12,066 bases of DNA from Vitrella brassicaformis CCMP3155 (Eukaryota; Protista; Chromerida): positions 1-12,066 of the forward strand of contig CDMY01000902.1 in NCBI GenBank assembly GCA_001179505.1. The letters run 5' to 3'. The notes below the pieces were generated by a model, which saw only the letters and a program-made list of their open reading frames with translations, searched no databases and had not been told where the DNA came from. Below are positions 1-12,066 of the stretch, piece by piece; positions within the stretch are counted from its first letter, which is position 1, and every line of letters starts with the position of its first letter. The position numbers and the translations under genes are program-made.

Positions 1-409
1 CGAAGACTTCGGCTCAGATAAGCAAGAACCAAGTTGCTGCGCCCAAGTGCGAAAAGGCCGGTGAAGACCTTTCCTGTAGTTAGATGAATAGAGGATCTGC
101 TGGGCGGTAAGTCCCAGTAAGAGTGTTTTTACTTTAGTAAGACCGATGGACTGACCAGTCAGTCAAAGTTGTTTCTGTCCATGTATGGCATCATGAAGGG
201 TGGTCAACACAGATCTCACTTCGGTGATGGCTGATAAGATCGTGTCTCCTCAGAATGCTTTCCTTGTCTTTCCTTGTCTTCTCCTCTCTCTCTCCGTTAC
301 ATAGCAATCTACCCTAGCTCACAAGCTCGCAGTGGTTCGTCTTGCCAAGCTGGCAATCCTGACACCGACCCCCCGACGGAGGAGGGCAACTCATGGGTTC
401 AATTCCTCC

Positions 410-629
410 AGTTGACCACAGCGCAAGTTTCTCGGGGAGGGTAGACTAGCTACCCTAAGGATCTCACTGGAGTGTCTGTCAAACGGATCTCACTGGGCGC
501 GCCGCGAGGACCAGCCGAAGAGTGGCACTAAATTCGCTTTCTTGGCAAGCGGACTTTTTCTCAGAGTGAAACGGACTTCTGTGCTATGTCAACTCTTCGA
601 ACGACGCATGAAGATGCATTCCCGCAACA
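410..629 (-). mobile_element. Candidate LTR (5' or solo) of a second LTR element
   Basis: On the minus strand it starts TGTTGCGGGAATG, versus TGTTGCGGAATG for the copia LTR at 8627, and ends GGTCAACT, versus CGCAACT. Length is 220 bp versus 229 bp. TGGAGGAATTGAACCC overlaps the last LTR base in the primer-binding-site position. There is little internal similarity to the 8399-8627 LTR and no gag ORF was recognised, so the call is tentative. Confidence 0.3.
459..496 (+). repeat. 12-bp direct repeat GGATCTCACTGG x2, next to a 7-bp hairpin
   Basis: Exact copies at 459-470 and 485-496, with partial copies at 212-220 (GATCTCACT) and 740-749 (CTCACTGGAG). A perfect stem AGGGTAG/CTACCCT lies at 438-456. 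Confidence 0.8.
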
Positions 630-1020
630 CATGAATGCGGTCAGTAGGGCTGATTGCTTAGACTTTTGGTTGGTTTATACTCGCAAGCGAGTGATTGGTC
701 TATCTTCTTCTTTCATGCTGGGGATCTCGCCGTGAATGACTCACTGGAGCCGTTTTCCATCACATTGACTCTCTTTCCCCCGCTCAGAACGACTCTGAAA
801 CAACGAAAAACCATCCATTCACTCGCTCATATGGGGTGCAAGTGGCTGCGAAGCCCTTGGTGTCTCCGTGTCTGACTCACCGTTGATCTCCACAAACTAG
901 TTTGCATGCCAGTGGGCCCATGACGGCACAAAAGGCACATAAATCATGCTGCCCCGCCTGCAGCGTGAATGCGCATATGCATCAGTCGAAATGATCATCA
1001 AATCGCGTCGCTCGCGCGAT

Positions 1021-1058
1021 GGGTGGATGGATGGGTGGGTGGGTGGGCTGATGGATGG
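1021..1058 (+). repeat. (GGAT/GGGT)n microsatellite-like tract
   Basis: gggtggatggatgggtgggtgggtgggctgatggatgg. Confidence 0.8.
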
Positions 1059-1484
1059 CTGTGAGGGGAGGGGAGCGAAAGGCAAGGGAGGGAGACTGGC
1101 CGGTGACATCAGCCCCGCACAAACGTGTGGGCTGGATGAATGTCATCAGATGCCTCAGATGACTCAACTGACCATCCTGTGAGTCACCAATGGGCGTTTG
1201 CTGCCTCGCGTGAGAGCGTGACTCAACCTCGGCAAGCAAACTCGCCTTTTCATCATCTGACAATCAAAATGTCTTTCTCCATGGAGTCACTCTTTCATTT
1301 TTCCGCTCTTTCACAGAGGGGTGCTTCATGTGTCTTGCGGTCATTTTGAGCCATGAAATGGTCCCTTTGGATAGCTGATGAGTGAGTGATTGGTTTATGC
1401 GGTTCATTTTGCTTGTGAATGGAGTGATCGGGATGGGCTGATTGCTTGACAGAAATGATTGCTTTATGTGGTTGTTTGTTGAAG

Positions 1485-3107
1485 GGGTATATCATGCCCG
1501 ACTCCCAGGATGCCAAAGACATGCCCAAGGGCGACATGAAGCGTCGCGAGGCCGCATGGACTGAGAAGAAAATCAAACTGAAAAACCCAAACTATGCCAT
1601 CAACCCACTCCGTAAACACGCAGAGGGCACGAGGACATGTGTGCTTGCCTTCCTACGTTATATTTTCTGGTGCTGCTGTCTATCAGGTTTGTCTATTCGC
1701 AATCTGCCCTTGTCTGTTGACCCCAATGGGCTGCGATCGGCCATCACATCCATCCTGACCAGTGACGACAGGGGCAAGGCAGCTCTCAGGTGACGAGCCG
1801 TGCGATCGGGGGATGATGCCACGGCACAGTCACATGAGACTGGTTTCTCGTCTGCATATTCAGGGCACCTCCATCTGAGTGGGACGACCCACAAGCGAGA
1901 CTGGTCGACACGGTGGGCCTGCAGGATGACAAGATGCTCAAGAAGAAAGCGGTGGCGGCCGTCAAGAGGGTAGGCGTCAGTATTCTGCCCACGCAGATAC
2001 CTGTTTGATCACTGTATGACCAAGACCGCAAGACCTATGTCGGGTCGCTGGGGCAGGAGAAAGTGCGACGATCGAAGGTCGGTAGACAGATGGCTTCGAC
2101 CCATACACAGCCACCCGCATATGTCTTTCCTTGACTTGTTGACGTACATGTATCTAGGGTTTTGCGTTTGTTGACTTCGGGCGGCATCGCGTGGCGCTGG
2201 CAACCCTCCGCTACCTCAACAACAACCCCACCGTGTTCGCCAAGCAAAAGTGAGCATGTGTGGTAATGCCTAGTATTCACATATCTACGTGCGCTGGTGC
2301 TTACCCGATGCGCAGGTGTCCCATAGTTGAGTTTGCCATTGAGGACAAGCGAGCCCTCAAATACAAAGTATGACACGTGCATAAGCAGCGCACCAGCAGG
2401 CACAGCCACACTGGCTGCATGCTGCCTTGCTTCTCCGCAGGAGATGCGCCGCGAGAAGGTCGAGAAAAGAAAGGCAGCAGCACTCGAAAAGCCGGCAACC
2501 GACGACGCGCAGGCCGAAAAAGAGAAAATGGCAGCGGGCGGGGAGCCGAGGGAGGACAGCACAGCAGAGATCAAGAAGAAAAGCAGAGGTCCGGATGGAC
2601 GTTTGCAACGGCATACTCAGACTTGAATGTGATGCGTTGTGTGACGGGCTGCAGGTCAGCGTCAGCGCGAGAGGCGACGCCAAGAGAGGGATGCCATGGA
2701 TACTGAGGAGCACCAACAGACGCAGGATGAGCCACGGGCCACCAAGAAAAGGAAGGCGGAGGATATCGCCCGGTACGGACACGTATAGAGTGGAGCACAG
2801 ATGCACGTCTGCATGTGTTGATCTGTCCACCCCATGTCGTGAAGGAGGGCCACCTGTTGGACCGTCTGGCCAAGTCGGCGACGCCCCATGAAGCGAGCGG
2901 CGCTGCTCTCCTCATCAAGATGCACAAGAAGGGAACCGTTCATGAGAGTGACGACCTGGAGGTGAGGAACGACCACACGAGCAAGTTCGCGAGGGCATTA
3001 CGCTTCTTTCTTGCACTTTTTCTCAGTTGTCGGCTCTCGCCCGTCGGAAGCGAAAACTGATTCAGATGGGCCCGAATCTTTTGTGCATATGTCAACGAAC
3101 AATGTGA
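1485..3107 (+). pseudogene. RBM28: 3' half of an RBM28/NOP4-like nucleolar RRM protein gene; about 10 exons, probably degraded or 5'-truncated
   Basis: Manually spliced exons: 1485-1611, 1687-1789, 1864-1969, ~2025-2077, 2158-2249, 2316-2367, 2441-2588, 2655-2772 (or 2782), 2845-2961 and 3027-3107, with GT-AG introns mostly 62-80 nt. The product reads GYIMPDSQDAKDMPKGDMKRRE..KKIKLKNPNYAINPLRLSIRNLP...RSKGFAFVDF..HRVALATLRYLNNNP..CPIVEFAIEDKRAL. This matches the last RRM and flanks of RBM28/Nop4 (DM.KRE, KLK.PN, RL...NLP, AL..L...NNNP, RPIVEF..ED). The exon 3/4 and 8/9 junctions do not splice cleanly, and no upstream DKRNLYL exon was found. Confidence 0.8.
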
Positions 3108-3260
3108 CGTATTCACTGTGATGGCGTTTGAGACTATCTATGGTTGTTGCTCGTTTCTGTTTTGACCGTCCACTGCTAAGTCACACACACATTCCAGATC
3201 GAAACAGATCCACCCACACACCCGTCTACTCTAGGCATGTAGGATCGTCAACACAAGCCG

Positions 3261-3358
3261 TCCAACAGTCCAAGGCACTCACACCCACCCACACGCAGAA
3301 CGAATGAATTAATGAATGGATGAAATGCATCACCATCTCTCAATCGCACCGATCACGA
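3261..3358 (+). repeat. ~95-bp dispersed direct repeat, copy 1 (copy 2 at 4068-4156)
   Basis: tccaacagtccaaggcactcaca...gaacgaatgaat...atgcatcacca..tctcaatcgcac.gatc.cga is shared collinearly, roughly 80% identical by eye. Confidence 0.85.
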
Positions 3359-3467
3359 ATAACGTCATGCAGAGGGCCATCCATCTATAACACGTTCTCA
3401 CGAGAAACAGACTCCTTCTCACGAGAGACAGACTCGAGAATGGCCAGAAAGTGATTGAATGAATAAA

Positions 3468-3872
3468 GGGGAGAAACTGTCATTAACCGTAACACTCGTC
3501 TGTGTGTCCGTGATACTCATACAAATACAGTCCCATCAGCACGCAGAGTCAAACAGGCTCAAGGGTTCCGGCAGTCACATCGTCGGCTGCATGTGGACAG
3601 CGCAGACGTCCCTTTCTCGTTGCATGCGCAACAGGGGGGCCCGCCGCCGTCTCGCGGGATGAGGGCAGGTGGAGGGGGTTGGGTGTAGTCCGATACACGC
3701 TCGCTCATCCGAAAAGGAGGAGAAACAGCCGAGAAATCACCAATTCAATCATGGGGGGAGGATTCCTACCAGCTAACGACGAAACTGGTGCTGTAAGTGT
3801 TATCACTTCGCGACTGCTTCGCGAACGCCTCGCAGTGAGTCGGCAACTGTGAGACTGTCTTGAATGAATAAA
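3468..3872. mobile_element. ~0.4-kb insertion nested in the left TIR with a 13-bp target-site-like duplication
   Basis: TTGAATGAATAAA occurs at 3455-3467 and 3860-3872. Removing the intervening DNA joins the two parts of the left TIR into a ~100-bp match to the right TIR. Confidence 0.5.
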
Positions 3873-4067
3873 TGAATGAATGAATGAATGAGTCAACGAA
3901 ACGATACGAATAATGACGCAAGGGCAGCAACTTGCAGTCACTGCAATGTGGCTATCTGACCAATCAACCGCCCGACCACCACAGACAACCAAGCGACACA
4001 TGCGTGCAGCCTGCACTGATGCTACTCTCCTGAGCCTTGCCACGGCCTCTCTCCATGAATCATGAGC

Positions 4068-4156
4068 TCCAACAATCCAAGGCACTCACACCACACGAAG
4101 AACGAATGAATGAACAAATGACATGCATCACCAAGTCTCAATCGCACTGATCGCGA
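4068..4156 (+). repeat. ~90-bp dispersed direct repeat, copy 2 (copy 1 at 3261-3358)
   Basis: Collinear match to 3261-3358. Confidence 0.85.
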
Positions 4157-4530
4157 CCCTGCGGATGACGAAAATGAAATCACCCAGTAGACAGATACAA
4201 TCGTCACTTCGGGGTGTGTAAATGAGTTCGATAGGACTGTTAGATATAGGTGAGACACACCATTGCTTGTTGCTTGTGTTGTGTGAGTGAGTGAGTGATG
4301 TCGATGGGCGGGTGGCTGGGTGATTGAACGGATGGATGGCTGCAAAGTGTGATGTACAACGTTAACGGGAGACAGGCGCCGGCGACCATCGGCTCATTTT
4401 CGCTAGCTTTGTGCTTCGGTAATGTGAGGCGACCAGGTACGAAAACATAGAGGCATTCTACACGCTCACTCAGGGTCAGCAATTTCAGCGCCGTCTACGA
4501 ATGGCTGATTCATATCTATGTTCAGCTTGA

Positions 4531-4549
4531 TCAATCAATCAATCAATCA
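4531..4549 (+). repeat. (TCAA)n microsatellite
   Basis: tcaatcaatcaatcaatca. Confidence 0.85.
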
Positions 4550-4834
4550 TTCACCATTGCAAAGAGGTCTCAGAAGTGAATGACTCATTCAATCATTCGT
4601 TGACTCATTCATTCATTCATTCATTCAATGACTTTCCGGCCATTCTCGAGTCTGCTTCTCGTGAGAAGGAGTCTGTTTCTCGTGAGAACGTGTTCTATCC
4701 ACCCACCCACTGGCAGCCACCTGCAGGTACAGGGGTGGTACAAGCTACACTAACCGCTCCATCACTACCGGAGCATTACTATAATTATACATCCAGCTAT
4801 GGCTGACAGAATCTACAATTTGCACCCACATCAC

Positions 4835-6110
4835 TCAACTGAGGGAATATCTATCTGAGATGCACTTTCGAGTGTTCGCATCTTTAAACAAATAGACCAT
4901 TGAGAATGACTTAGTCTCAGCTCCGGCACGGAACATGGCAGTGTTGGCAAAGGACGTTGCCGTAGTGACCGATGCACATCCCCATCCCATCACCAGCCAC
5001 TCCAGCAGCGGATGAGAAATTCTCACCGATATGTGAGCTGTATGCTCAATTTTGACGTCATTGTACGCAACACGCCCATACCTCGATAATCGTTCTTTGG
5101 CCTTCACCCGAAGCTCGGCCGAGTCAGAAGTGAAAAACACTGATGCGTTCCACGACGAGACATTGAGCATGTCGCCAAACAAGGTATCCACACATGACCA
5201 AAACTCGTTTTGACGCCAAATTATGGTCTTATGCAAGGAGCGCTCATCAAAAAAAGTACGAAACTGAACCACAGCAAGAGGACGGTCGAGATATAATCCG
5301 ATTGCCCTCATAAGTTCCATTGCTTTGTGAACCACCTCCTCTTTAGGTTTTGACAGCAACCAGGCCAAAGCACTTTGGAGCGGGCCAAAGGCGTCCGACA
5401 GTTCCTCCCAAAAATGTCGTCAAAGCGTAAGCGATATTTCGGATGGTTGAGTGTGATCATGAACGCACCGTGGCCATCCCTATTGATCACCAGCCGCTTG
5501 GAATACAGCTTGTTCCAGTCGGCATTGGCAGCTTGGAACTGGCCGGATTTCAATAAAACATTCTGACGTTCGTCGTCTGGTACAGCCTGAGCCACACTAT
5601 TTGCACCATATCTGTTGTCGCAAGGGACGAAGAAAGCATTCTGGCCGAGTGTTGGCGAATCAAACACTATGTGGAAGGCACCATGGTCGATCAGGAATAT
5701 GCGCTCGGTAGCCAAAGAAAACAACAAAGTGGACACCGAGGACCCAATGCGATTCCCCCAACCGGGATGTCCTCTTTCATAGCGATACACGACATAGCGG
5801 CGCTTCTCGGCAGGCAAAGCCATGTTCAGCGAATAAATCCGCTCCAACTCTCGTATGACGGGTTGCGAGTCGAGATCAGGAAACCCGACCCGTCCTTCAA
5901 TCACGTCCAAAGGGGTGAAGGGGAACTTATGCCCAGCTTTCACCGCTGTATTTGGGAAGTGACTTTCTTTTTCAGACACAATGTCATCGGATGCCTTCAG
6001 GGGACCCTCTCCCAGGATCTGCGCCGCCTTGAGTACCACGGGTGCAGAAAGAGTACGATGCCGGTGAACAGCAGCGCGGAAGCGAGAAGGAAACGGGGCC
6101 GTGGAAACAT
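4835..6110 (-). pseudogene. Intronless fucosyltransferase-like gene (GT37/GT23-type fold) with two -1 frameshifts; about 425 aa if repaired
   Basis: An ATG at 6110 gives a type II membrane anchor, MFPRPRFLLASALLFTGIVLFLH. After a shift at ~6040, ORF 5308-6039 contains GWGNRIGSSVSTLLFSLATERIFLID, similar to GLGNRIL.L.S.FLYALLT.RVLLVD of plant xyloglucan FUT1. After a shift at ~5375, ORF 4835-5368 contains AVVQFRT, VFFTSDS and LEWLVMGWGCASVTTATSFA, which correspond to the fucosyltransferase motifs I-III (H/Q-x-R, FxxTD, SxF). Confidence 0.75.
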
Positions 6111-6246
6111 TATTATTTCTCGTTTCAAGTCCCGATAAAAACGGACGCGTTATCTGGGAAGCCTAACCGCTCGTGGAAAAAACGGCTTTTTCCTTGCCGA
6201 GAAACACGATCGGCAGTACCGAGACACCCAGAAATTTGAAGGAAAT

Positions 6247-6296
6247 CATTGATTGATTGACTGATTGATTGATTGATTGATCGAATGATTGTTTGA
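6247..6296 (+). repeat. (GATT)n microsatellite
   Basis: cattgattgattgactgattgattgattgattgatcgaatgattgtttga. Confidence 0.9.
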
Positions 6297-6605
6297 TTAA
6301 TTCATGTTCCTGCCTGCTGTAGCCCGGGGTTTTGTCCGTGACAGGACAACGCTATGAAATAGCGCTTACTCGATGCTGATTCACCAATCGATAAGAGACA
6401 CAATTAAGAATGAATGACGACAAGCACACGAGTCAAGTCGACCTGATGTCACGACGAGTCAAAGGAGGCAACGAGTCGCAATGGCACTGGCTACACACAC
6501 ACACAAGTCGAATGTACAAATGCACACGTCTCAAGACTAGTCAGTGTCCGTCCTGTCAGTCCTATCCCTCTACCCGCTTTTCCTGTCTTTGTCGGCCACG
6601 CGCAG

Positions 6606-6807
6606 AGGCGCCAATCGGCAGAGGAAGCACGAGGCACCAGGGGCTGGTGCGATAGAGCTGTTGATCAAACAAGCCTGCCGAGCCGCAGGGAATGACGTCT
6701 TGACCACGAGATCTTGTCGGAGAGAAGCTGGGTGCGTGGATCTGGCGAAGACAGTCCTCGCCTGTGGTCTTCGGCCCCGTCTGGCCGGCTGGGATGATCA
6801 CGGTGGG
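6606..6807 (+). other. Possible orphan exon, weakly ankyrin-repeat-like
   Basis: A pyrimidine-rich tract ending CGCAG at 6605 and a GTGAGG donor at 6808 bracket an open frame, GAIELLIKQACRAAGNDVL...GCVDLAKTVLACG. No neighbouring exons were identified. Confidence 0.25.
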
Positions 6808-7002
6808 GTGAGGTGTTGGAAGGAAAGACACGGAGACGCCGCTCCGTGCAGTGGGCTTGCTGACGACGGTTGAGAGCACAAATACCTCTGGGGGGGCACG
6901 GAAGGCTCAGATGCTTGAAATCCACTAAGACAAAAGATGGATGCCGATGGGTCGGAAAATGGATGACCAGATGAAGCAAATGAGGCAGGAATGGGCCCTC
7001 TC

Positions 7003-7060
7003 GCTGAGGAAGTCCTGATTCGATGAGGACTTTCTCATCCGGATGAGGAAATCCTCACTC
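7003..7060. repeat. Three tandem ~19-bp self-complementary units, consensus GATGAGGA-NN-TCCTCATC
   Basis: gctgaggaagtcctgattc (7003-7021), gatgaggactttctcatcc (7022-7040), gatgaggaaatcctcactc (7042-7060). Confidence 0.75.
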
Positions 7061-7441
7061 ATAATAGTTTCACGATGCGAGCTTGGCAACCGGACCTAAA
7101 GCATCAGGCCCTTTATTCTTTGGTCTGAGACTCATCGATCTCCTTTTTCCTTTCAGAACTGTGAAAAACGAGGGCTACATCTCCAAGGGGTGAACGCACT
7201 CACGGGGAGGTGCAGAAAATTTTAATTTGGCCCATCGCCTCTCACATGAACCACAGGGACACGGAGCAGAAAAACTGGATGGCGAGAGAATGAGCCCGCC
7301 TTGCAAACTCCCTCGGGCTTTTGCCTCCTTGAATCAGTAAAAACGGAATCCGAAACAACGGTGCAGCTACCGTTGGGTGGCGGCTGAAATTTGAGGAACC
7401 TTTTTGACAGCGTCGTAGTTCTGGCCGCCTGCGTGTGGACT

Positions 7442-8300
7442 CAGCACAGCGAGATATGTCATGCACGTGCTGTCAGCTTTCACACTTAGGTCTCTTTCTC
7501 AAACGGCGCAAAGCGATAGCCGCTGGGGTGCAGACACAGACTGCAAAACGTATGAGTACATGTGCTTGGCATGAAATGAATTACAGTGTGCAATGAACTA
7601 GAATCCGAAGAGAAGTCAACACCGCCAAATGCCGTGTAATCGACACCAGTTTTCCCATTTTTTGAGACAACAAGACGGTCATGAGCACTGCGCGCTTGCG
7701 TGTGAATACAGCATAGCGAGATATATCATACATTCACACAATCGTGCTGTTTAGGTCCACAGCTGTCTCGAGTTTCGGTGGCGGTATGATGCAGTAACAC
7801 ACTTGTATTGAGTTCGGTCCACAAGTGCTGTCAGCAGTTGTCAGCATTCACATTTGGCTCTCTTTCTTCAAACGGCGCAAAACGATGGCCGCTGGTCATG
7901 ATACAAAGTGCATAACGTATGATGACATGTGCCTGGCGTGGAATGAGATACAGTGCGCAATGAACCTTGTCAACCAAGTTCCATGTAATGGACACCAGTT
8001 TTCCCATTTTTTTGACACAATGATACGGTCATGAACGGTCGCCGCGTGCGTGTGAATACAGCATAGAAAGTCGTTTCATGCATTAACACAATCGTGCTGG
8101 TTTAGGTCCACAGCTGTGCCCACGTTCGGTGCCTAGTTCTCTTTCTCAAGACGGCGCAGAGCAATGGCGGCTGGCGTGCAGACACAGCATGACGGGATGT
8201 ATCTAGATGTATCAGACATACATGCTTTTGCGTCGAATGAATGAGAGTCCCGAGAGAAATCAGCAGAATCCTCAAATTCCGTGTATCCGACACCAGTGGT
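7442..8300. repeat. Diverged tandem repeat with a ~290-370-bp unit (2 full copies, 1 partial, plus a fragment)
   Basis: Shared anchors: tctctttctc..acggcgca (7491, ~7859, 8138), gacaccagt (7642, 7991, 8289), an exact 20-mer tgcgtgtgaatacagcatag (7697, 8047) and tttaggtccacagctgt (7750, 8101). No conserved ORF was seen across copies. Confidence 0.9.
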
Positions 8301-8398
8301 CGCCACCTTTTACCCGAACGACAGGGCGCAATTGCGACTAGAAGCAGACTCGTCTCTGGCAGCGTCCGTGCGCACGCATATATTTCATCAACCAGATC

Positions 8399-8627
8399 AG
8401 TTGCGTAACACAGTGGTCAAGCGAGGTATCGGCTAACGCACACCAAGCACAAAGAGCCTTCACGGAACACGCAAGAGTCTTTTGTCCGATGCAGGGAGGG
8501 ACAGGCAGACAGAAGGAGAGCGGGCGCTAACCGTCCATCTATCTATCCGCCATTTCGGATTCGCATTCGCATGGCTCTAGGGCGCGTATAACTGTTCTCC
8601 AACCTGTGGGCGTATCATTCCGCAACA
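8399..8627 (-). repeat. 3' LTR of the copia element (~229 bp)
   Basis: It starts TGTTGCGG directly after the PPT, so the 8627 boundary is well supported. The other end is placed at the inverted repeat CGCAACT (8399-8405) and is less certain because the 5' LTR is outside the window. Confidence 0.65.
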
Positions 8628-8638
8628 CCCCTCTTCGC
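8628..8638 (-). promoter_or_regulatory. Polypurine tract (plus-strand primer)
   Basis: Minus strand reads GCGAAGAGGGG immediately followed by TGTTG. Confidence 0.8.
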
Positions 8639-8872
8639 ACACAGCACTAGGAACCACGAAGCCCTAGCCAAACCCTGAACCTCAAACCCAGGAGTTGGAT
8701 CCTGCTTCACTCTTCCAACCGTGTGCGTCTGTTGGACAGTCGGAGGACGGCAACCGAGCCAACCCACCAATGAACGGTTCCATCTGGATGCAGGAGCGGT
8801 GCCTCACGTGTACTCTCCCAACCGATGGGTCAGTCACACACACTACACAGCACTGTGGGACTCTCTGCTTCC

Positions 8873-11800
8873 TTAGTCCACCTTGCGCCTCTTTGTCATA
8901 TCACTCTTTGATGTCTGACGCTTTCTCTTCTGCCTCTCAGGCTCAGTCGTCAGCCCATCGTTGCTGAGAGTGATGGCGTCGGCTCCTCTCGTCACCATGC
9001 ACGTCAACTTCGCGTGCTGTGACGCAGGGAGCGACTTTGTCAGGAGATCAGCAACATTCTCCTTCGACGGTACGTACTCGGGCCTTATCTTCCCGTCCTG
9101 GTAAGTGCTGCGCACATGATGGTACTTGATAGCAACATGCCTCGTCTTCTTTGAGGCCTGATGGTTCTTGATATTCTGTATGCAACCATCGTTGTCGCCA
9201 TACAGGACTGTGGGTGGCACCTTGAAGCCCAGCCCCTCCATCAGTTGCATCAAGTACAGCAGTTCACGAGTGCAGTCACTTGCAGCGATGTACTCTGTGC
9301 TACTCAGGGCCACAATCGACTGCGTTCTGCTCGACCACGCGATCGGGCATCCATCCATCTGGATGACGAAACCGCCGGTGCTCTTGGCGTTCTCCTGGTC
9401 GGCCCATGACGCATCCGCATAGGCGACAAGCGCCGCGGTGTTCTCGTCATCTTCGTGGCCAGGTATGCGCCCAAGAGTAGGTCGGCCTTCATCCCAATGG
9501 TTGCCGCACTCATGGCATATGTGTATGCGGTGTGGTTTGTGCAGATCGATCCTTCTCGTACCGGCCATGATGATGTGCTTGCCCTCTGGTGGCTCCTCGT
9601 GGCGGACACCACAATGGGGGCAGTTCAACACATCGTCAGTGGCCTTTCGCTTGAAGACCAATCCTCGCCCAGCGGTCCCCTTCAGGTACCGAAGCACATG
9701 GCACGCATATCTGAAGTGAGTCTTGCCCCAGCACGAAAAGAACTTGGTCAGTTCCTTACATGCATAGGCAATGTCTGGTCTCACTGTGATTGCGCTGTAC
9801 AGCAGGCTTCCAACCAGCTCTCTGTACGGCAACTCGCGTGCGGCCTCTGCCTCTGCCTCTGTTCGGGGGCCCATTTCTGAGCTCAAACGCACACCTGGTG
9901 GCAATGGCGTCATGGCTGGGTTGGCTCGTTCCATCCGGAACTTGGTGAGCAGGCTAGAGATGTACTTCTCTTGCGAGAGTGTCATCTCTCCCTTCTCTTT
10001 GTCGTATTTGACCTTGATGCCTACGAAGGTGTCGACTTCGCCGAGATCCTTGATGGCAAATCGTTGGCCGATTTCCTCCAAGAACCAATCGAGGTCAGCA
10101 TCGCACCCAGCATAGACAATGTCATCGACAACCACACCCAGCCATAGCTGTCGTGTCTTGTGTGTGAAGATGCAGGGATCAGCGTCGAGTGGCTCGAAGC
10201 CCATGGCCCTCAGCGACTGTACCAGCAGCTGATTCCATGCTCTCGGCGCCTCCCTCAGCCCATACAGGGCCTTTCGCAGTCGAATGACATGCCCAGGCTT
10301 CTCGTATCCTTCTGGGCACTCCATGTACACAGGAGTGTCCAGTGGCGCGTTGAGGAAAGCGGTGTTTACGTCCAGCTGACGCATCGACCACCCTTTCTTC
10401 AATACAGCCGCCATAAAGGTACGGACAGCCTGTCCAGACATCGTAGGTGCATACGTCTCTTCGTCAGGTCCCAGCCGCTGTTGGAAGCCTTTGGCGACCA
10501 ACCACGCTTTCTTCCTGTCGGGCTTCTGTTTGAAGACCCATTTGGCCTGGATGACTCGTCCATCCGCCTCCTCACGTAAGACGTACTCAAACACACCCAG
10601 ATCGTGCATGGCTTGATGCTCCTTGTCCATTGCCTCTATCCAGCCCTCACACTCAGGCCCTTCGCGGGCTTCCTGACATGTTTNNNNNNNNNNNNNNNNN
10701 NNNNNNNNNNNNNNNNNNNNNNNNNNNNNNNNNNNNNNNNNNNNNNNNNNNNNNNNNNNNNNNNNNNNNNNNNNNNNNNNNNNNNNNNNNNNNNNNNNNN
10801 NNNNNNNNNNNNNNNNNNNNNNNNNNNNNNNNNNNNNNNNNNNNNNNNNNNNNNNNNNNNNNNNNNNNNNNNNNNNNNNNNNNNNNNNNNNNNNNNNNNN
10901 NNNNNNNNNNNNNNNNNNNNNNNNNNNNNNNNNNNNNNNNNNNNNNNNNNNNNNNNNNNNNNNNNNNNNNNNNNNNNNNNNNNGCGGGCTTCCTGACATG
11001 TTTCAGGCTCATAGACGGTGTCGGCCATCGGTCCTGCCTTGACACTGAATGCATTCACAAACAGGTCAGGTAGACCACCCGCACGGCCACGGGAGCGTCT
11101 CTTGCCAGCACTTCTCTGTCTCGGCTGCTGTGTGTACAGGTGTGACCAGTCTGGTGGTGCGTCAGAGGTCCTTCCAGTATTGCACATGCATCGTGAGGAC
11201 TTCACTGCCAGGCAACGGCAGCCCTCGCCTCCCCTCTTCGCATCCACCCGGCCCCTTCCTGTCTTCTTATCCCCACACAGACGAACGACAACCGGTCCAT
11301 TCGTCACACCGACCTGCACAGCACGGACATCGAATAGATGGTCCTCGTACAAGTGTCGTGGTATCAGCCTTTCGCGTCCAGAGCACCGTGGCGGAGGGGG
11401 TGGTGGTGCTCGTCGGTCGAGAGCCATCTCGCCCTCATCGATCGGCATGAGTTCCACATCTGCATCGCTCGGCTGGGGGGCTGCTGGGCCTGGTGCCGGG
11501 TTGGCATCCATCCCATCTGCATCCATGTGGTCGTGCTCTGGGTTGCTGGCTCTCGGCTGCCCGTCCATTTGGACGTCGCCTGCCCCACTCGGGCCATCGT
11601 ACGACTCATCCCCGCCTGCCTGCACATGGCCTTGCTGACCGAGGTCACCCATCTCCTCCAGCTCATCGGGCTCAACATCTCTTATCTCTGGCTTCTCGGC
11701 GACAATCGGGTCGCTCTCAGCGACAATCGGGTCGCTCTCAGGGTTGACTATCACATCCCCTCTTCGAGCCGATTGGTGCGCTAAGTCAGCCAGTCCATCC

Positions 11801-12066
11801 CCTCTTTGCGCGTGGTCGTCGACAAGCTCAGGGCGGGCCTGGAGAGGTTCACCGAGTCTATGGGTGGCCTCCCAGCTGGCCGGCACGAGCCGTCGATGCC
11901 AGGTACGCTTCTCGAGGAAACGAACATCACGCGAGATGATGACGCGTCTTGTTTTGGGGTTCCACATGCGATAGGCATCCTTGGTTCGACCATCATAGCC
12001 TATCAGCAGCATGGGAACTGCCCTGGCCGCAAACTTGTGTGCTCTGAAGGGCTTCCGCACATGGAC
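8873..12066 (-). CDS. pol: Copia Pol polyprotein, partial: integrase SH3-like C-terminus, linker, reverse transcriptase (RVT_2 type), inserted Zn-ribbon-like segment, RNase H, basic tail
   Basis: Integrase C-terminus: KFAARAVPMLLIGYD...AYRMWNPKTRRVIISRDVRFLE. RT: EPETCQEA, W.EAMDKE, KWVFKQK, LVAKGFQQ, QLDVNTAFLNA, LRKALYGLREAPRAW, VVDDI, YRELVGSLLY, RPDIAYA, VLRYLKGT. RNase H: YADASWA, KSTGG, WSSRTQSIVALSSTEY, GDN, KTRHVAIKYH, VADLLTK. TAA stop at 8873-8875. Collapsing the N gap gives one frame of about 957 codons. Confidence 0.95.
10684..10983. other. 300-N scaffold gap, probably spurious
   Basis: The 20-mer gcgggcttcctgacatgttt appears on both sides (10664-10683 and 10984-11003). Confidence 0.95.
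11699..11741. repeat. In-frame 21-bp tandem duplication in the integrase-RT linker (ESDPIVA x2)
   Basis: gcgacaatcgggtcgctctca occurs twice, at 11699-11719 and 11720-11740. Confidence 0.95.

What the first reader, a model, noticed from the sequence alone, without database searches (positions are those of the whole stretch)
9436..9645. Zinc-ribbon-like domain inserted in frame between RT and RNase H of a copia element
Seen in the sequence: 71 residues lie between the RT end (YLKGTAGRGLVFKRK) and the RNase H start (LVAYADASW). They read ATDDVLN-CPHC-GVRHEEPPEGKHIIMAGTRRIDLHKPHRIHI-CHEC-GNHWDEGRPTLGRIPGHEDDENTAA, which is CxxC-x31-CxxC with several extra His. Established: Ty1/copia Pol normally has only a few residues here, and its Zn-binding motifs are the Gag CCHC knuckle and the integrase HHCC. 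Inference: this is a captured Zn-binding module in the RT-RH tether that could bind the primer/template, target chromatin or counter host defence. From memory, the pattern CPxCGxxH...PHxxHxCxxCGxxW resembles small phage/bacterial hypothetical Zn-ribbon domains; that is unverified. The insert is in frame, stop-free and keeps both Cys pairs, although neighbouring Pol motifs have decayed.
Basis: partly seen in the sequence, partly recalled or inferred. Interest (0 to 1): 0.75.

Follow-up and report, generated by a model that had tools for sequence, protein, structure and literature searches.

The report
Roving zinc-ribbon domain in copia Pol
A Ty1/copia retrotransposon of the alga Vitrella brassicaformis carries an extra, selected ~60-residue zinc-ribbon domain that sits at different places in the Pol protein of sister lineages and is related to an unnamed domain of bacteriophage proteins; its function is untested.

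Summary
A 71-codon, stop-free insert (window 9431-9643, minus strand) lies between the RT C-terminal region and RNase H of a copia Pol. Copia copies without it in the same genome have 8-10 residues there.

It is a real protein domain, not junk:
- About 17 copies occur in the Vitrella brassicaformis genome at 31-67% identity.
- All four Cys are kept in 62 of 63 instances, counting environmental and phage relatives. One His and one Pro are kept in 63 of 63.
- dN/dS is 0.19, as in the flanking RT (0.18) and RNase H (0.12).
- AlphaFold gives a confident beta-rich fold (pLDDT 86).

The same module sits in different Pol linkers in different copia lineages: protease-integrase, integrase-RT, RT-RNase H, and after RNase H in environmental contigs. 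Another copia clade lacks it.

It is homologous to the N-terminal domain of phrog_14118, a proteobacterial phage family of unknown function (hhalign 98.7%, reciprocal HMM hits). No Pfam or NCBIfam family, solved structure or paper covers it.

Function is inferred only; nucleic-acid docking in the integrase-RT complex is my best guess. First readers of this scan noted the same insert on two other pieces of this genome.

The parts
9431..9643 (-). 71-codon insert. The conserved zinc-ribbon core is about 58 residues, with the signature CxxC-x3-H-x-E ... [WH]-x-P-H-xx-H-x-CxxC-G-xx-[WF] ... P-T-x-G.
   Evidence: AlphaFold2 pLDDT 86. dN/dS 0.19 against C359.
9644..9895 (-). RT C-terminal helical region, ending in YLKGTAGRGLVFKRK
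9902..10567 (-). Reverse transcriptase core, Pfam RVT_2 (E 3e-46). Motif A LDVNTAF and motif C VVDD are intact.
9047..9430 (-). RNase H domain starting at LVAYADASW. The catalytic D, E and D are present.
8873..10683 (-). Pol reading frame downstream of the gap (RT, module, RNase H, C-terminal tail). The stop codon is at 8873-8875.
10684..10983 (.). 300-N scaffold gap flanked by a duplicated 20-nt stretch. It is an assembly artefact, not a real interruption.
10984..12060 (-). Upstream part of the same Pol frame: the integrase C-terminal SH3-like domain (PF25597, about 11899-12054) and a long linker. The element runs off the window end.
8399..8872 (-). 3' untranslated/LTR region of the element. 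Family homology ends at 8399, where a different repeat family begins.

Best explanation
Shown: the insert is an autonomously folding accessory domain of about 60 residues with a Cys4 zinc-ribbon pattern, translated as part of the Gag-Pol polyprotein of a Ty1/copia retrotransposon of Vitrella brassicaformis. It belongs to an unnamed domain family whose other members are stand-alone or fused domains in proteobacterial phage proteins (the N-terminal domain of phrog_14118). Selection maintains it.

Inferred origin: a copia ancestor probably captured it once, and it was later moved between Pol interdomain linkers, for example by template switching during reverse transcription. It now lies between protease and integrase, between integrase and RT, between RT and RNase H (this window), or after RNase H, depending on the lineage.

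Inferred mechanism: every position leaves it attached to integrase or RT-RNase H. Its conserved non-ligand residues (H14, E/D16, P36, H37, H40, the aromatic residue at 49 and the P-T-x-G tail) are shared between phage and algal versions. So it most likely docks onto a universal ligand inside the replication/integration complex. My best guess, at about 40%, is nucleic acid: template-primer, cDNA or target DNA. Zinc binding and the ligand are not shown.
For: Copies and conservation:
- The genome holds about 17 copies at 31-67% identity, with C7, C10, E16, L33, P36, H40, C42, C45, G57 and P60 invariant in the 9-sequence alignment.
- Across 63 eukaryotic and phage instances, the four Cys are kept in 62, H40 and P36 in 63, H14 in 60, an acidic residue at position 16 in 61, and H37 in 59.

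Positions in Pol:
- Single open frames show protease-module-integrase (C6, C778, C846), integrase-SH3-module-RT (C275, C791, C511) and RT-module-RNase H (C902, C703, C736, C359).
- Environmental proteins P0006, P0007, P0009, P0013 and P0016 carry it after RNase H.
- The copia clade of C515, C615, C350, C487, C21 and C331 has no module.

Selection: dN/dS of the module is 0.19, against 0.18 for the RT C-terminal region and 0.12 for RNase H. It is 0.19-0.21 between A-type subfamilies.

Fold: AlphaFold2 gives pLDDT 86 and four beta strands. The model of the domain in context keeps the helical RT end and the RNase H fold on either side.

Phage homology:
- The profile search of 1.84 billion representative proteins gave phage/bacterial hits at E 1e-6 to 1e-3, and these match phrog_14118.
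- hhalign of the Vitrella-only alignment against the phage-only alignment gives 98.7% probability and E 1.7e-16.
- The reciprocal phage-only HMM retrieves only the modules, with the window's family at E about 1e-9 (its near-identical copy on C703 at 1.3e-10). The reversed-sequence control gives nothing.
- The hits lie in Burkholderia phages BcepF1, Maja and vB_E192a.

Single origin: it is not rejected. Forcing all module-bearing RTs into one clade costs 0.52 lnL, AU p 0.46. The module-bearing lineages share motif C VVDD, while the module-less clade has FVDD.

Not a nucleocapsid substitute: Gag CCHC knuckles are present in the module-bearing C6 and C284 elements.
Against: - No experiment or known homologue gives a function. 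All phage relatives are annotated as hypothetical or of unknown function.
- The module is not strongly basic. Median net charge is +1 in Vitrella and -2 in phages, which weakens non-specific nucleic-acid binding.
- Structure searches give only weak, generic Zn-ribbon matches (Foldseek E at least 0.5, VIA no Z of 2 or more).
- The module tree is an unresolved star, so a single capture followed by relocation cannot be told from several captures.
- Modelled in context with only three module-bearing rows, the domain has low pLDDT.
- Whether the Pol protease releases the module is unknown.
Confidence: 0.6

Rival explanations
1. It is an integration-targeting or host-factor tether. The zinc ribbon would bind a host chromatin or transcription-machinery protein and steer the pre-integration complex, as the chromodomain of chromoviruses or the Ty5 and Ty1 integrase targeting domains do.
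For: In two of the position classes the module flanks integrase, on the protease-integrase or the integrase-RT side. Its charge is near neutral. The weak fold and name resemblances are to Zn ribbons of RNA polymerase subunits and TFIIS/TFIIB.
Against: In the window's family and in the environmental elements it sits on RT-RNase H, not on integrase. The conserved surface residues are shared with proteobacterial phage proteins, which argues against an alga-specific protein partner. The C family has too few copies (3-6) for any insertion-site preference to be measured.
Confidence: 0.22
2. It is a counter-defence module. As a domain taken from phage early-region proteins, it would inhibit a host restriction or silencing factor.
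For: The phage relatives lie in early-region gene clusters of small hypothetical proteins, and one lies near a reverse transcriptase and a methyltransferase gene. The weak Pfam match that spans both knuckles is to the Lar restriction-alleviation family (E 0.085).
Against: The Lar match is far below threshold, and the Lar model finds none of the modules in this genome. The PHROG scans assign the phage relatives no function, anti-defence or otherwise. A defence target shared by proteobacteria and alveolates is unlikely.
Confidence: 0.08
3. The module was captured several times rather than relocated. Different copia lineages would each have taken it from viral or cellular donors into different linkers.
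For: The module tree is an unresolved star, with Vitrella modules interleaved with environmental ones. The backbone of the RT tree is unresolved. Stand-alone relatives exist (P0004, and P0005 on contigs of 17-18% GC).
Against: No non-copia gene with the module was found in the Vitrella genome. One clade of all module-bearing RTs is not rejected (AU p 0.46), and they share motif C VVDD. The sampled phage clade is a separate long branch with 100/99 support.
Confidence: 0.3
4. It is a tolerated passenger, an artefact or a non-protein insertion: an intron, a miniature transposon or a mis-assembly with no function for the element.
For: The tether between RT and RNase H is a surface linker that could tolerate insertions. 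Near-identical copies show relaxed dN/dS, for example 1.27 between C511 and C1018.
Against: The Cys and His residues are invariant across 31-67% identity and across species. dN/dS is 0.19 at dS of about 1.3. The fold is confident. The domain has homologues in phage proteins and lies in intact long open frames on independent scaffolds.
Confidence: 0.03

Closest known systems
Ty1/copia (Pseudoviridae) Gag-Pol polyprotein
   Same: It has RVT_2 reverse transcriptase, RNase H, an integrase core with an SH3-like domain and a Pol beta-barrel protease. Related copies have a Gag CCHC knuckle and the order PR-IN-RT-RH.
   Different: It carries an extra zinc-ribbon domain of about 60 residues in an interdomain linker, at a position that differs between lineages. 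Motif C is VVDD rather than Y/FVDD.
N-terminal domain of phrog_14118 (hypothetical proteins of Burkholderia phages BcepF1, Maja and vB_E192a, and many proteobacterial prophage-like proteins)
   Same: It shares the signature CPxCGxxH-x-[DE]-xP ... W-x-(P)PH-xx-H-x-CxxCG-xx-W ... PTxG. hhalign gives 98.7% probability, and the HMM hits are reciprocal.
   Different: The phage versions form a separate clade on a long branch. They have NPPHRSH and an invariant Asp instead of Glu, and a longer variable hairpin. They are fused to unrelated domains or stand alone. The window's module does not reach the PHROG model directly. Their function is unknown too.
Chromodomain of chromoviruses (Ty3/gypsy), and the Ty5 and Ty1 integrase targeting domains
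   Same: Each is an accessory binding module added to an LTR-retrotransposon Pol and kept by selection. This comparison rests on established knowledge and concerns the concept only.
   Different: They have a different fold and a fixed place at the integrase C-terminus, and their chromatin ligands are known. Here the position varies and the ligand is unknown.
Cys-rich motifs next to the RT of non-LTR elements (the LINE-1 ORF2p C-terminal CCHC domain, R2 zinc knuckles)
   Same: They are zinc-binding motifs flanking a reverse transcriptase and are thought to contact nucleic acid. This rests on established knowledge.
   Different: They have different patterns and folds and belong to a different class of element. 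No sequence relation was detected.
Named Pfam zinc-ribbon families (Zn_ribbon_9, Zn_ribbon_3, TFIIS, Lar_restr_allev)
   Same: They share two CxxC knuckles on beta hairpins.
   Different: All matches are below the gathering scores (E 0.002-0.5), and most cover a single knuckle. The Lar model does not find the modules.

Membership tests
Ty1/copia LTR retrotransposon | RVT_2-type reverse transcriptase | tested here: met
   PF07727, E 3.1e-46, 158 bits against a cut-off of 31.6
Ty1/copia LTR retrotransposon | Pol domain order protease - integrase - RT - RNase H | tested here: met
   The window shows IN-SH3, RT and RNase H in that order. Full-order copies are C846, C284 and C6+C778. The window itself is cut off inside integrase.
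Ty1/copia LTR retrotransposon | Flanking long terminal repeats | tested here: inconclusive
   The window holds only the 3' end (8399-8872). An A-type copy on C778 has direct repeats of 94 nt, 95% identical and 6.5 kb apart. No pair was found for the C-family copies examined.
Zinc ribbon (structural class) | Two CxxC knuckles at beta-hairpin turns | tested here: met
   The four Cys are conserved in 62 of 63 instances. The AlphaFold2 model is all-beta with pLDDT 86. This is a prediction only.
Zinc ribbon (structural class) | Binds one Zn2+ through the four Cys | not testable with these tools
   This needs metal analysis of the purified domain. The conserved H14, H37, H40 and E16 leave a second site possible.
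phrog_14118 N-terminal domain family | A significant match to the family profile | tested here: inconclusive
   The window's module has no PHROG hit at E 0.01 or better. Against this, profile-profile comparison gives 98.7%, the phage-only HMM hits the window at E 1.3e-9, and the Vitrella profile retrieves the phage proteins at E 1e-6 to 1e-3 in 1.84 billion sequences. It is a sister branch rather than a member.
Lar restriction alleviation (PF14354) | A match above the gathering score | tested here: not met
   13.6 bits against a cut-off of 28.6. A genome-wide search with the model finds none of the modules.
Gag CCHC knuckle / integrase HHCC | The pattern CX2CX4HX4C, or HX3-7HX23-32CX2C at the integrase N-terminus | tested here: not met
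   The module's pattern is CX2C-x31-CX2C. Module-bearing elements have their own Gag CCHC and pre-integrase/integrase domains.

The most novel reading that the evidence does not exclude
An unnamed zinc-binding domain shared by phages and eukaryotic retrotransposons is a portable functional cassette. A copia ancestor captured it once and then shuffled it among at least four Pol linker positions. It performs a conserved biochemical task there, for example recognising a nucleic-acid structure or binding a second metal through its His3/acid cluster, that is required for replication of these elements. That would make it a new class of accessory Pol domain and a rare documented case of a domain moving within a retroelement polyprotein.
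Probability: 0.3. Interest if true: 0.8.

Novelty: new variant of a known kind. Interest (0 to 1): 0.6.

Why it matters
Accessory domains of LTR retrotransposons, such as chromodomains and targeting domains, have shown how these elements choose targets and interact with their hosts. As far as I could find, none has been described for Ty1/copia Pol in the form of a zinc ribbon.

Here one domain occupies three linkers within a single genome and a fourth in environmental relatives, all under purifying selection. This gives a natural experiment on how modular a retroelement polyprotein is, and on how domains move within it.

The link to a large phage family with no Pfam or NCBIfam model and no known function means that a biochemical answer for either side would annotate both.

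The practical value is modest: the family deserves a profile, for example in Pfam, and should be looked for in the copia elements of Chromera, dinoflagellates and other alveolates.

Tried and rejected
- Named families. Pfam, NCBIfam and PHROG scans of the module gave only sub-threshold, single-knuckle Zn-ribbon matches.
- Lar restriction alleviation was rejected.
- Structure searches. Foldseek against the PDB, VIA-align wide and a sequence profile against the PDB gave only generic or spurious matches, such as ribosomal L37ae/L43e-type ribbons and local C2H2 finger similarity.
- ESM Atlas returned only unnamed small proteins.
- HNH/His-Me finger was considered because His residues lie between the two CxxC pairs. 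I rejected it because the model has no helix and the spacing does not fit (established knowledge of the beta-beta-alpha-metal fold).
- A substitute for the Gag nucleocapsid knuckle was rejected, because module-bearing elements keep their CCHC.
- A module tree to decide between one and several captures was unresolved.
- The organism behind assembly GCA_013332895.1, the source of P0008, could not be identified.
- Domain partners of the phage relatives gave no functional theme.
- Other open frames in the window (1-8000) have no Pfam match.
- The in-context structure model added little, because the module part of the alignment is thin.

Full report
**What is there.** The window is scaffold C902 of a 72,700,666-base, 1064-scaffold assembly. 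Those figures match exactly the Vitrella brassicaformis CCMP3155 assembly described in PMC4501334. Earlier notes of this scan name the same organism.

A Ty1/copia Pol gene lies on the minus strand. One open frame runs from 10999 to 8873 (709 codons). A second frame, upstream, reaches the window end at 12060. The 300-N gap at 10684-10983 is flanked by a duplicated 20-nt stretch encoding ETCQEAR on both sides. So the two frames are one continuous Pol and the gap is an assembly artefact.

Pfam finds RVT_2 (E 3e-46) downstream of the gap and the retroviral SH3-like integrase domain upstream of it. The element's homology to its family ends at 8399, where another repeat family begins.

**The observation.** They lie between the end of the helical RT C-terminal region and the first strand of RNase H.

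I aligned this region with nine copia elements from the same genome. Elements that lack the segment have 8-10 residues between GLxF and LxxYADxS. The window's family has a clean insertion of about 62 residues there.

**It is a conserved protein domain.**
- A six-frame search of the genome with the 71 residues, and then with a profile, found about 17 full copies. Three are nearly identical (C902, C703, C736), one is 66-67% identical (C359), and the rest are 31-48% identical.
- In a 9-sequence alignment C7, C10, E16, L33, P36, H40, C42, C45, G57 and P60 are invariant.
- Over 63 instances, including environmental and phage relatives, all four Cys are present in 62. H40 and P36 are present in 63, H14 in 60, an acidic residue at position 16 in 61, and H37 in 59.
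- Between the window and C359, dN/dS of the module is 0.19 at dS of about 1.3. The adjacent RT segment gives 0.18 and RNase H 0.12. Between A-type subfamilies it is 0.19-0.21. Near-identical copies show relaxed ratios, as expected for dead insertions.
- AlphaFold2 on the 9-sequence alignment gives pLDDT 86 and a small all-beta fold with four strands.

**The position is not fixed.** Pfam scans and tblastn mapping of long open frames show three arrangements in this genome.

| Arrangement | Scaffolds |
|---|---|
| protease beta-barrel - module - pre-integrase/integrase | C6, C778, C806, C659, C508, C846, C284 |
| integrase - SH3 - module - RT | C275, C791, C511, C1018 |
| RT - module - RNase H | C902, C703, C736, C359 |

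Each element has one module.

A further copia clade has none (C515, C615, C350, C487, C21, C331), and neither do two divergent elements (C418, C817).

An RT+RNase H tree makes the window's family one clade (100/100), the protease-integrase type two clades, and the integrase-RT type three long lineages. The main module-less group forms a separate clade (92/93). The backbone is unresolved.

Forcing all module-bearing elements into one clade costs only 0.52 log-likelihood units (AU p 0.46). These elements share VVDD at RT motif C, where the module-less clade has FVDD. One capture followed by relocation is therefore compatible with the data, but it is not shown.

**Relatives elsewhere.** I searched the 9-sequence profile against 1.84 billion representative proteins. 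It gave 79 hits at E 1e-3 or better. They fall into four groups.
- The best hits are Vitrella gene models.
- A handful are eukaryote-like fragments from metagenomes and one fragmented NCBI assembly. Several of these carry the module after the RNase H C-terminus (P0006, P0007, P0009, P0013, P0016). One has protease-module-integrase (P0008), and two have it upstream of RT (P0010, P0033). Two look stand-alone (P0004, P0005); P0005 sits on contigs of 17-18% GC.
- From P0017 down, the single-stretch hits fetched (37 extracted) are a uniform proteobacterial/phage family. Their motif reads CPxCGxQH[IV]DAPE ... W-x-NPPHRSHLCHGCGHIWRPADVPTNGV.
- The multi-stretch hits that I read (P0011, P0014, P0019): P0011 is a C2H2 finger array, a local false positive; P0014 and P0019 are tandem short versions of the module.

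The phage-type proteins match the first 60 positions or so of phrog_14118, a family of unknown function. They match no Pfam or NCBIfam family. tblastn places them in Burkholderia phages BcepF1, Maja, Karil-Mokiny-1 and vB_E192a and in a few others, annotated as hypothetical proteins among early-region genes.

The homology is solid:
- hhalign of the Vitrella-only alignment against the phage-only alignment gives 98.7% probability, E 1.7e-16 and 40% consensus identity over 57 columns.
- An HMM built only from the phage sequences retrieves only the modules among 4548 six-frame pieces of Vitrella loci. The window's family scores best (window E 1.3e-9, its near-identical copy on C703 1.3e-10). The same pieces reversed give nothing.

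In a tree of the modules the phage clade is a separate long branch (100/99), and the eukaryotic modules form an unresolved star.

**What it is not.**
- No named Zn-ribbon family reaches its threshold.
- The Lar model does not find the modules.
- No solved structure is related by sequence. By fold there are only weak, generic Zn-ribbon rows (Foldseek E at least 0.5, VIA nothing at Z 2 or more).
- It does not replace the Gag nucleocapsid knuckle, which module-bearing elements retain.
- No non-copia gene of Vitrella carries it within the sensitivity of the genome search.
- Full-text searches found no paper on a zinc ribbon in copia or LTR-retrotransposon Pol. The chromerid genome paper does not mention copia (0 occurrences in its main text); I did not search it for the domain.

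The claim that neighbouring Pol motifs have decayed does not hold. RT motif A (D), motif C (DD) and the RNase H D, E, D residues are all present in the window. VVDD is a lineage feature, and the flanks are under purifying selection.

**How it probably works (inference).** The domain folds on its own in linkers. It is found only in Pol, and in every arrangement it ends up attached to integrase or to RT-RNase H. From established work on Ty1, these proteins act together in the virus-like particle and the pre-integration complex.

Beyond the four Cys, a cluster of His and acidic residues and the P-T-x-G tail are conserved between alveolate retrotransposons and proteobacterial phages. This points to a universal ligand rather than a host-specific protein. 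I therefore favour docking onto nucleic acid, at about 40%.

Two cautions apply. The charge is near neutral, and there is no functional annotation anywhere in the family.

The rival functions are a tether to a host factor for target choice (about 22%), counter-defence (about 8%), and a functionless passenger (about 3%). The question of one capture or several is separate; I put repeated capture at about 30%.

**Limits.**
- Zinc binding, processing sites, expression and the ligand are all untested.
- Other alveolate genomes could not be searched directly.

**Verdict.** The core of the interpretation, a captured and conserved zinc-ribbon module related to phage domains, is supported. The domain turns out to be more interesting than proposed, because it moves between Pol positions. 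It is a new variant of a known kind of element. Interest: 0.6.

Noticed in passing
window 10684-10983: The 300-N scaffold gap is flanked on both sides by the same 20 nt (gcgggcttcctgacatgttt, encoding ETCQEAR). It is a zero-length or overlapping gap that artificially splits the Pol frame.
   Followed up: yes
window 9896-10576, and the RT regions of L021-L043: RT motif C reads VVDD (or V[IM]DD; FVDD in C511, row L023_B) in the module-bearing copia lineages, but FVDD in the module-less clade. This may be a shared derived trait of the module-bearing group.
   Followed up: partly
window 8033-8398: A different repeat family, with 30 or more copies at 78-95% identity, abuts the 3' end of the copia element at 8398/8399. 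The copia is therefore inserted into another repeat.
   Followed up: partly
P0034 (metagenomic protein, 237 aa): It has the module at the N-terminus fused to a dihydrofolate-reductase-like domain (NCBIfam type 3 DHFR, E 2e-11).
   Followed up: partly
P0014, P0019, P0021, P0032, P0041 (bacterial-type proteins): They carry two or three tandem, shorter versions of the module that lack the middle hairpin, interleaved with a conserved YPGGIxLWG...GIHVHA segment of unknown function.
   Followed up: no
L023 (C511) 1502-1939 and L035 (C284) 6023-7827: Partial duplicated RT and RNase H fragments lie between the module and the full-length RT. These copies are internally rearranged or nested.
   Followed up: no
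L047/L048 (metagenome contigs carrying P0005): A stand-alone 69-residue relative of the module lies on densely coded contigs of 17-18% GC. It resembles the copia modules (HFEP, DLHKPH) more than the Burkholderia-phage clade, so it could be a donor-type lineage.
   Followed up: partly
L046 (Burkholderia phage vB_E192a) 1626-5486: The phage gene that holds the domain lies four genes downstream (1.3 kb) of an annotated RNA-directed DNA polymerase, with a DNA methyltransferase gene in between.
   Followed up: no
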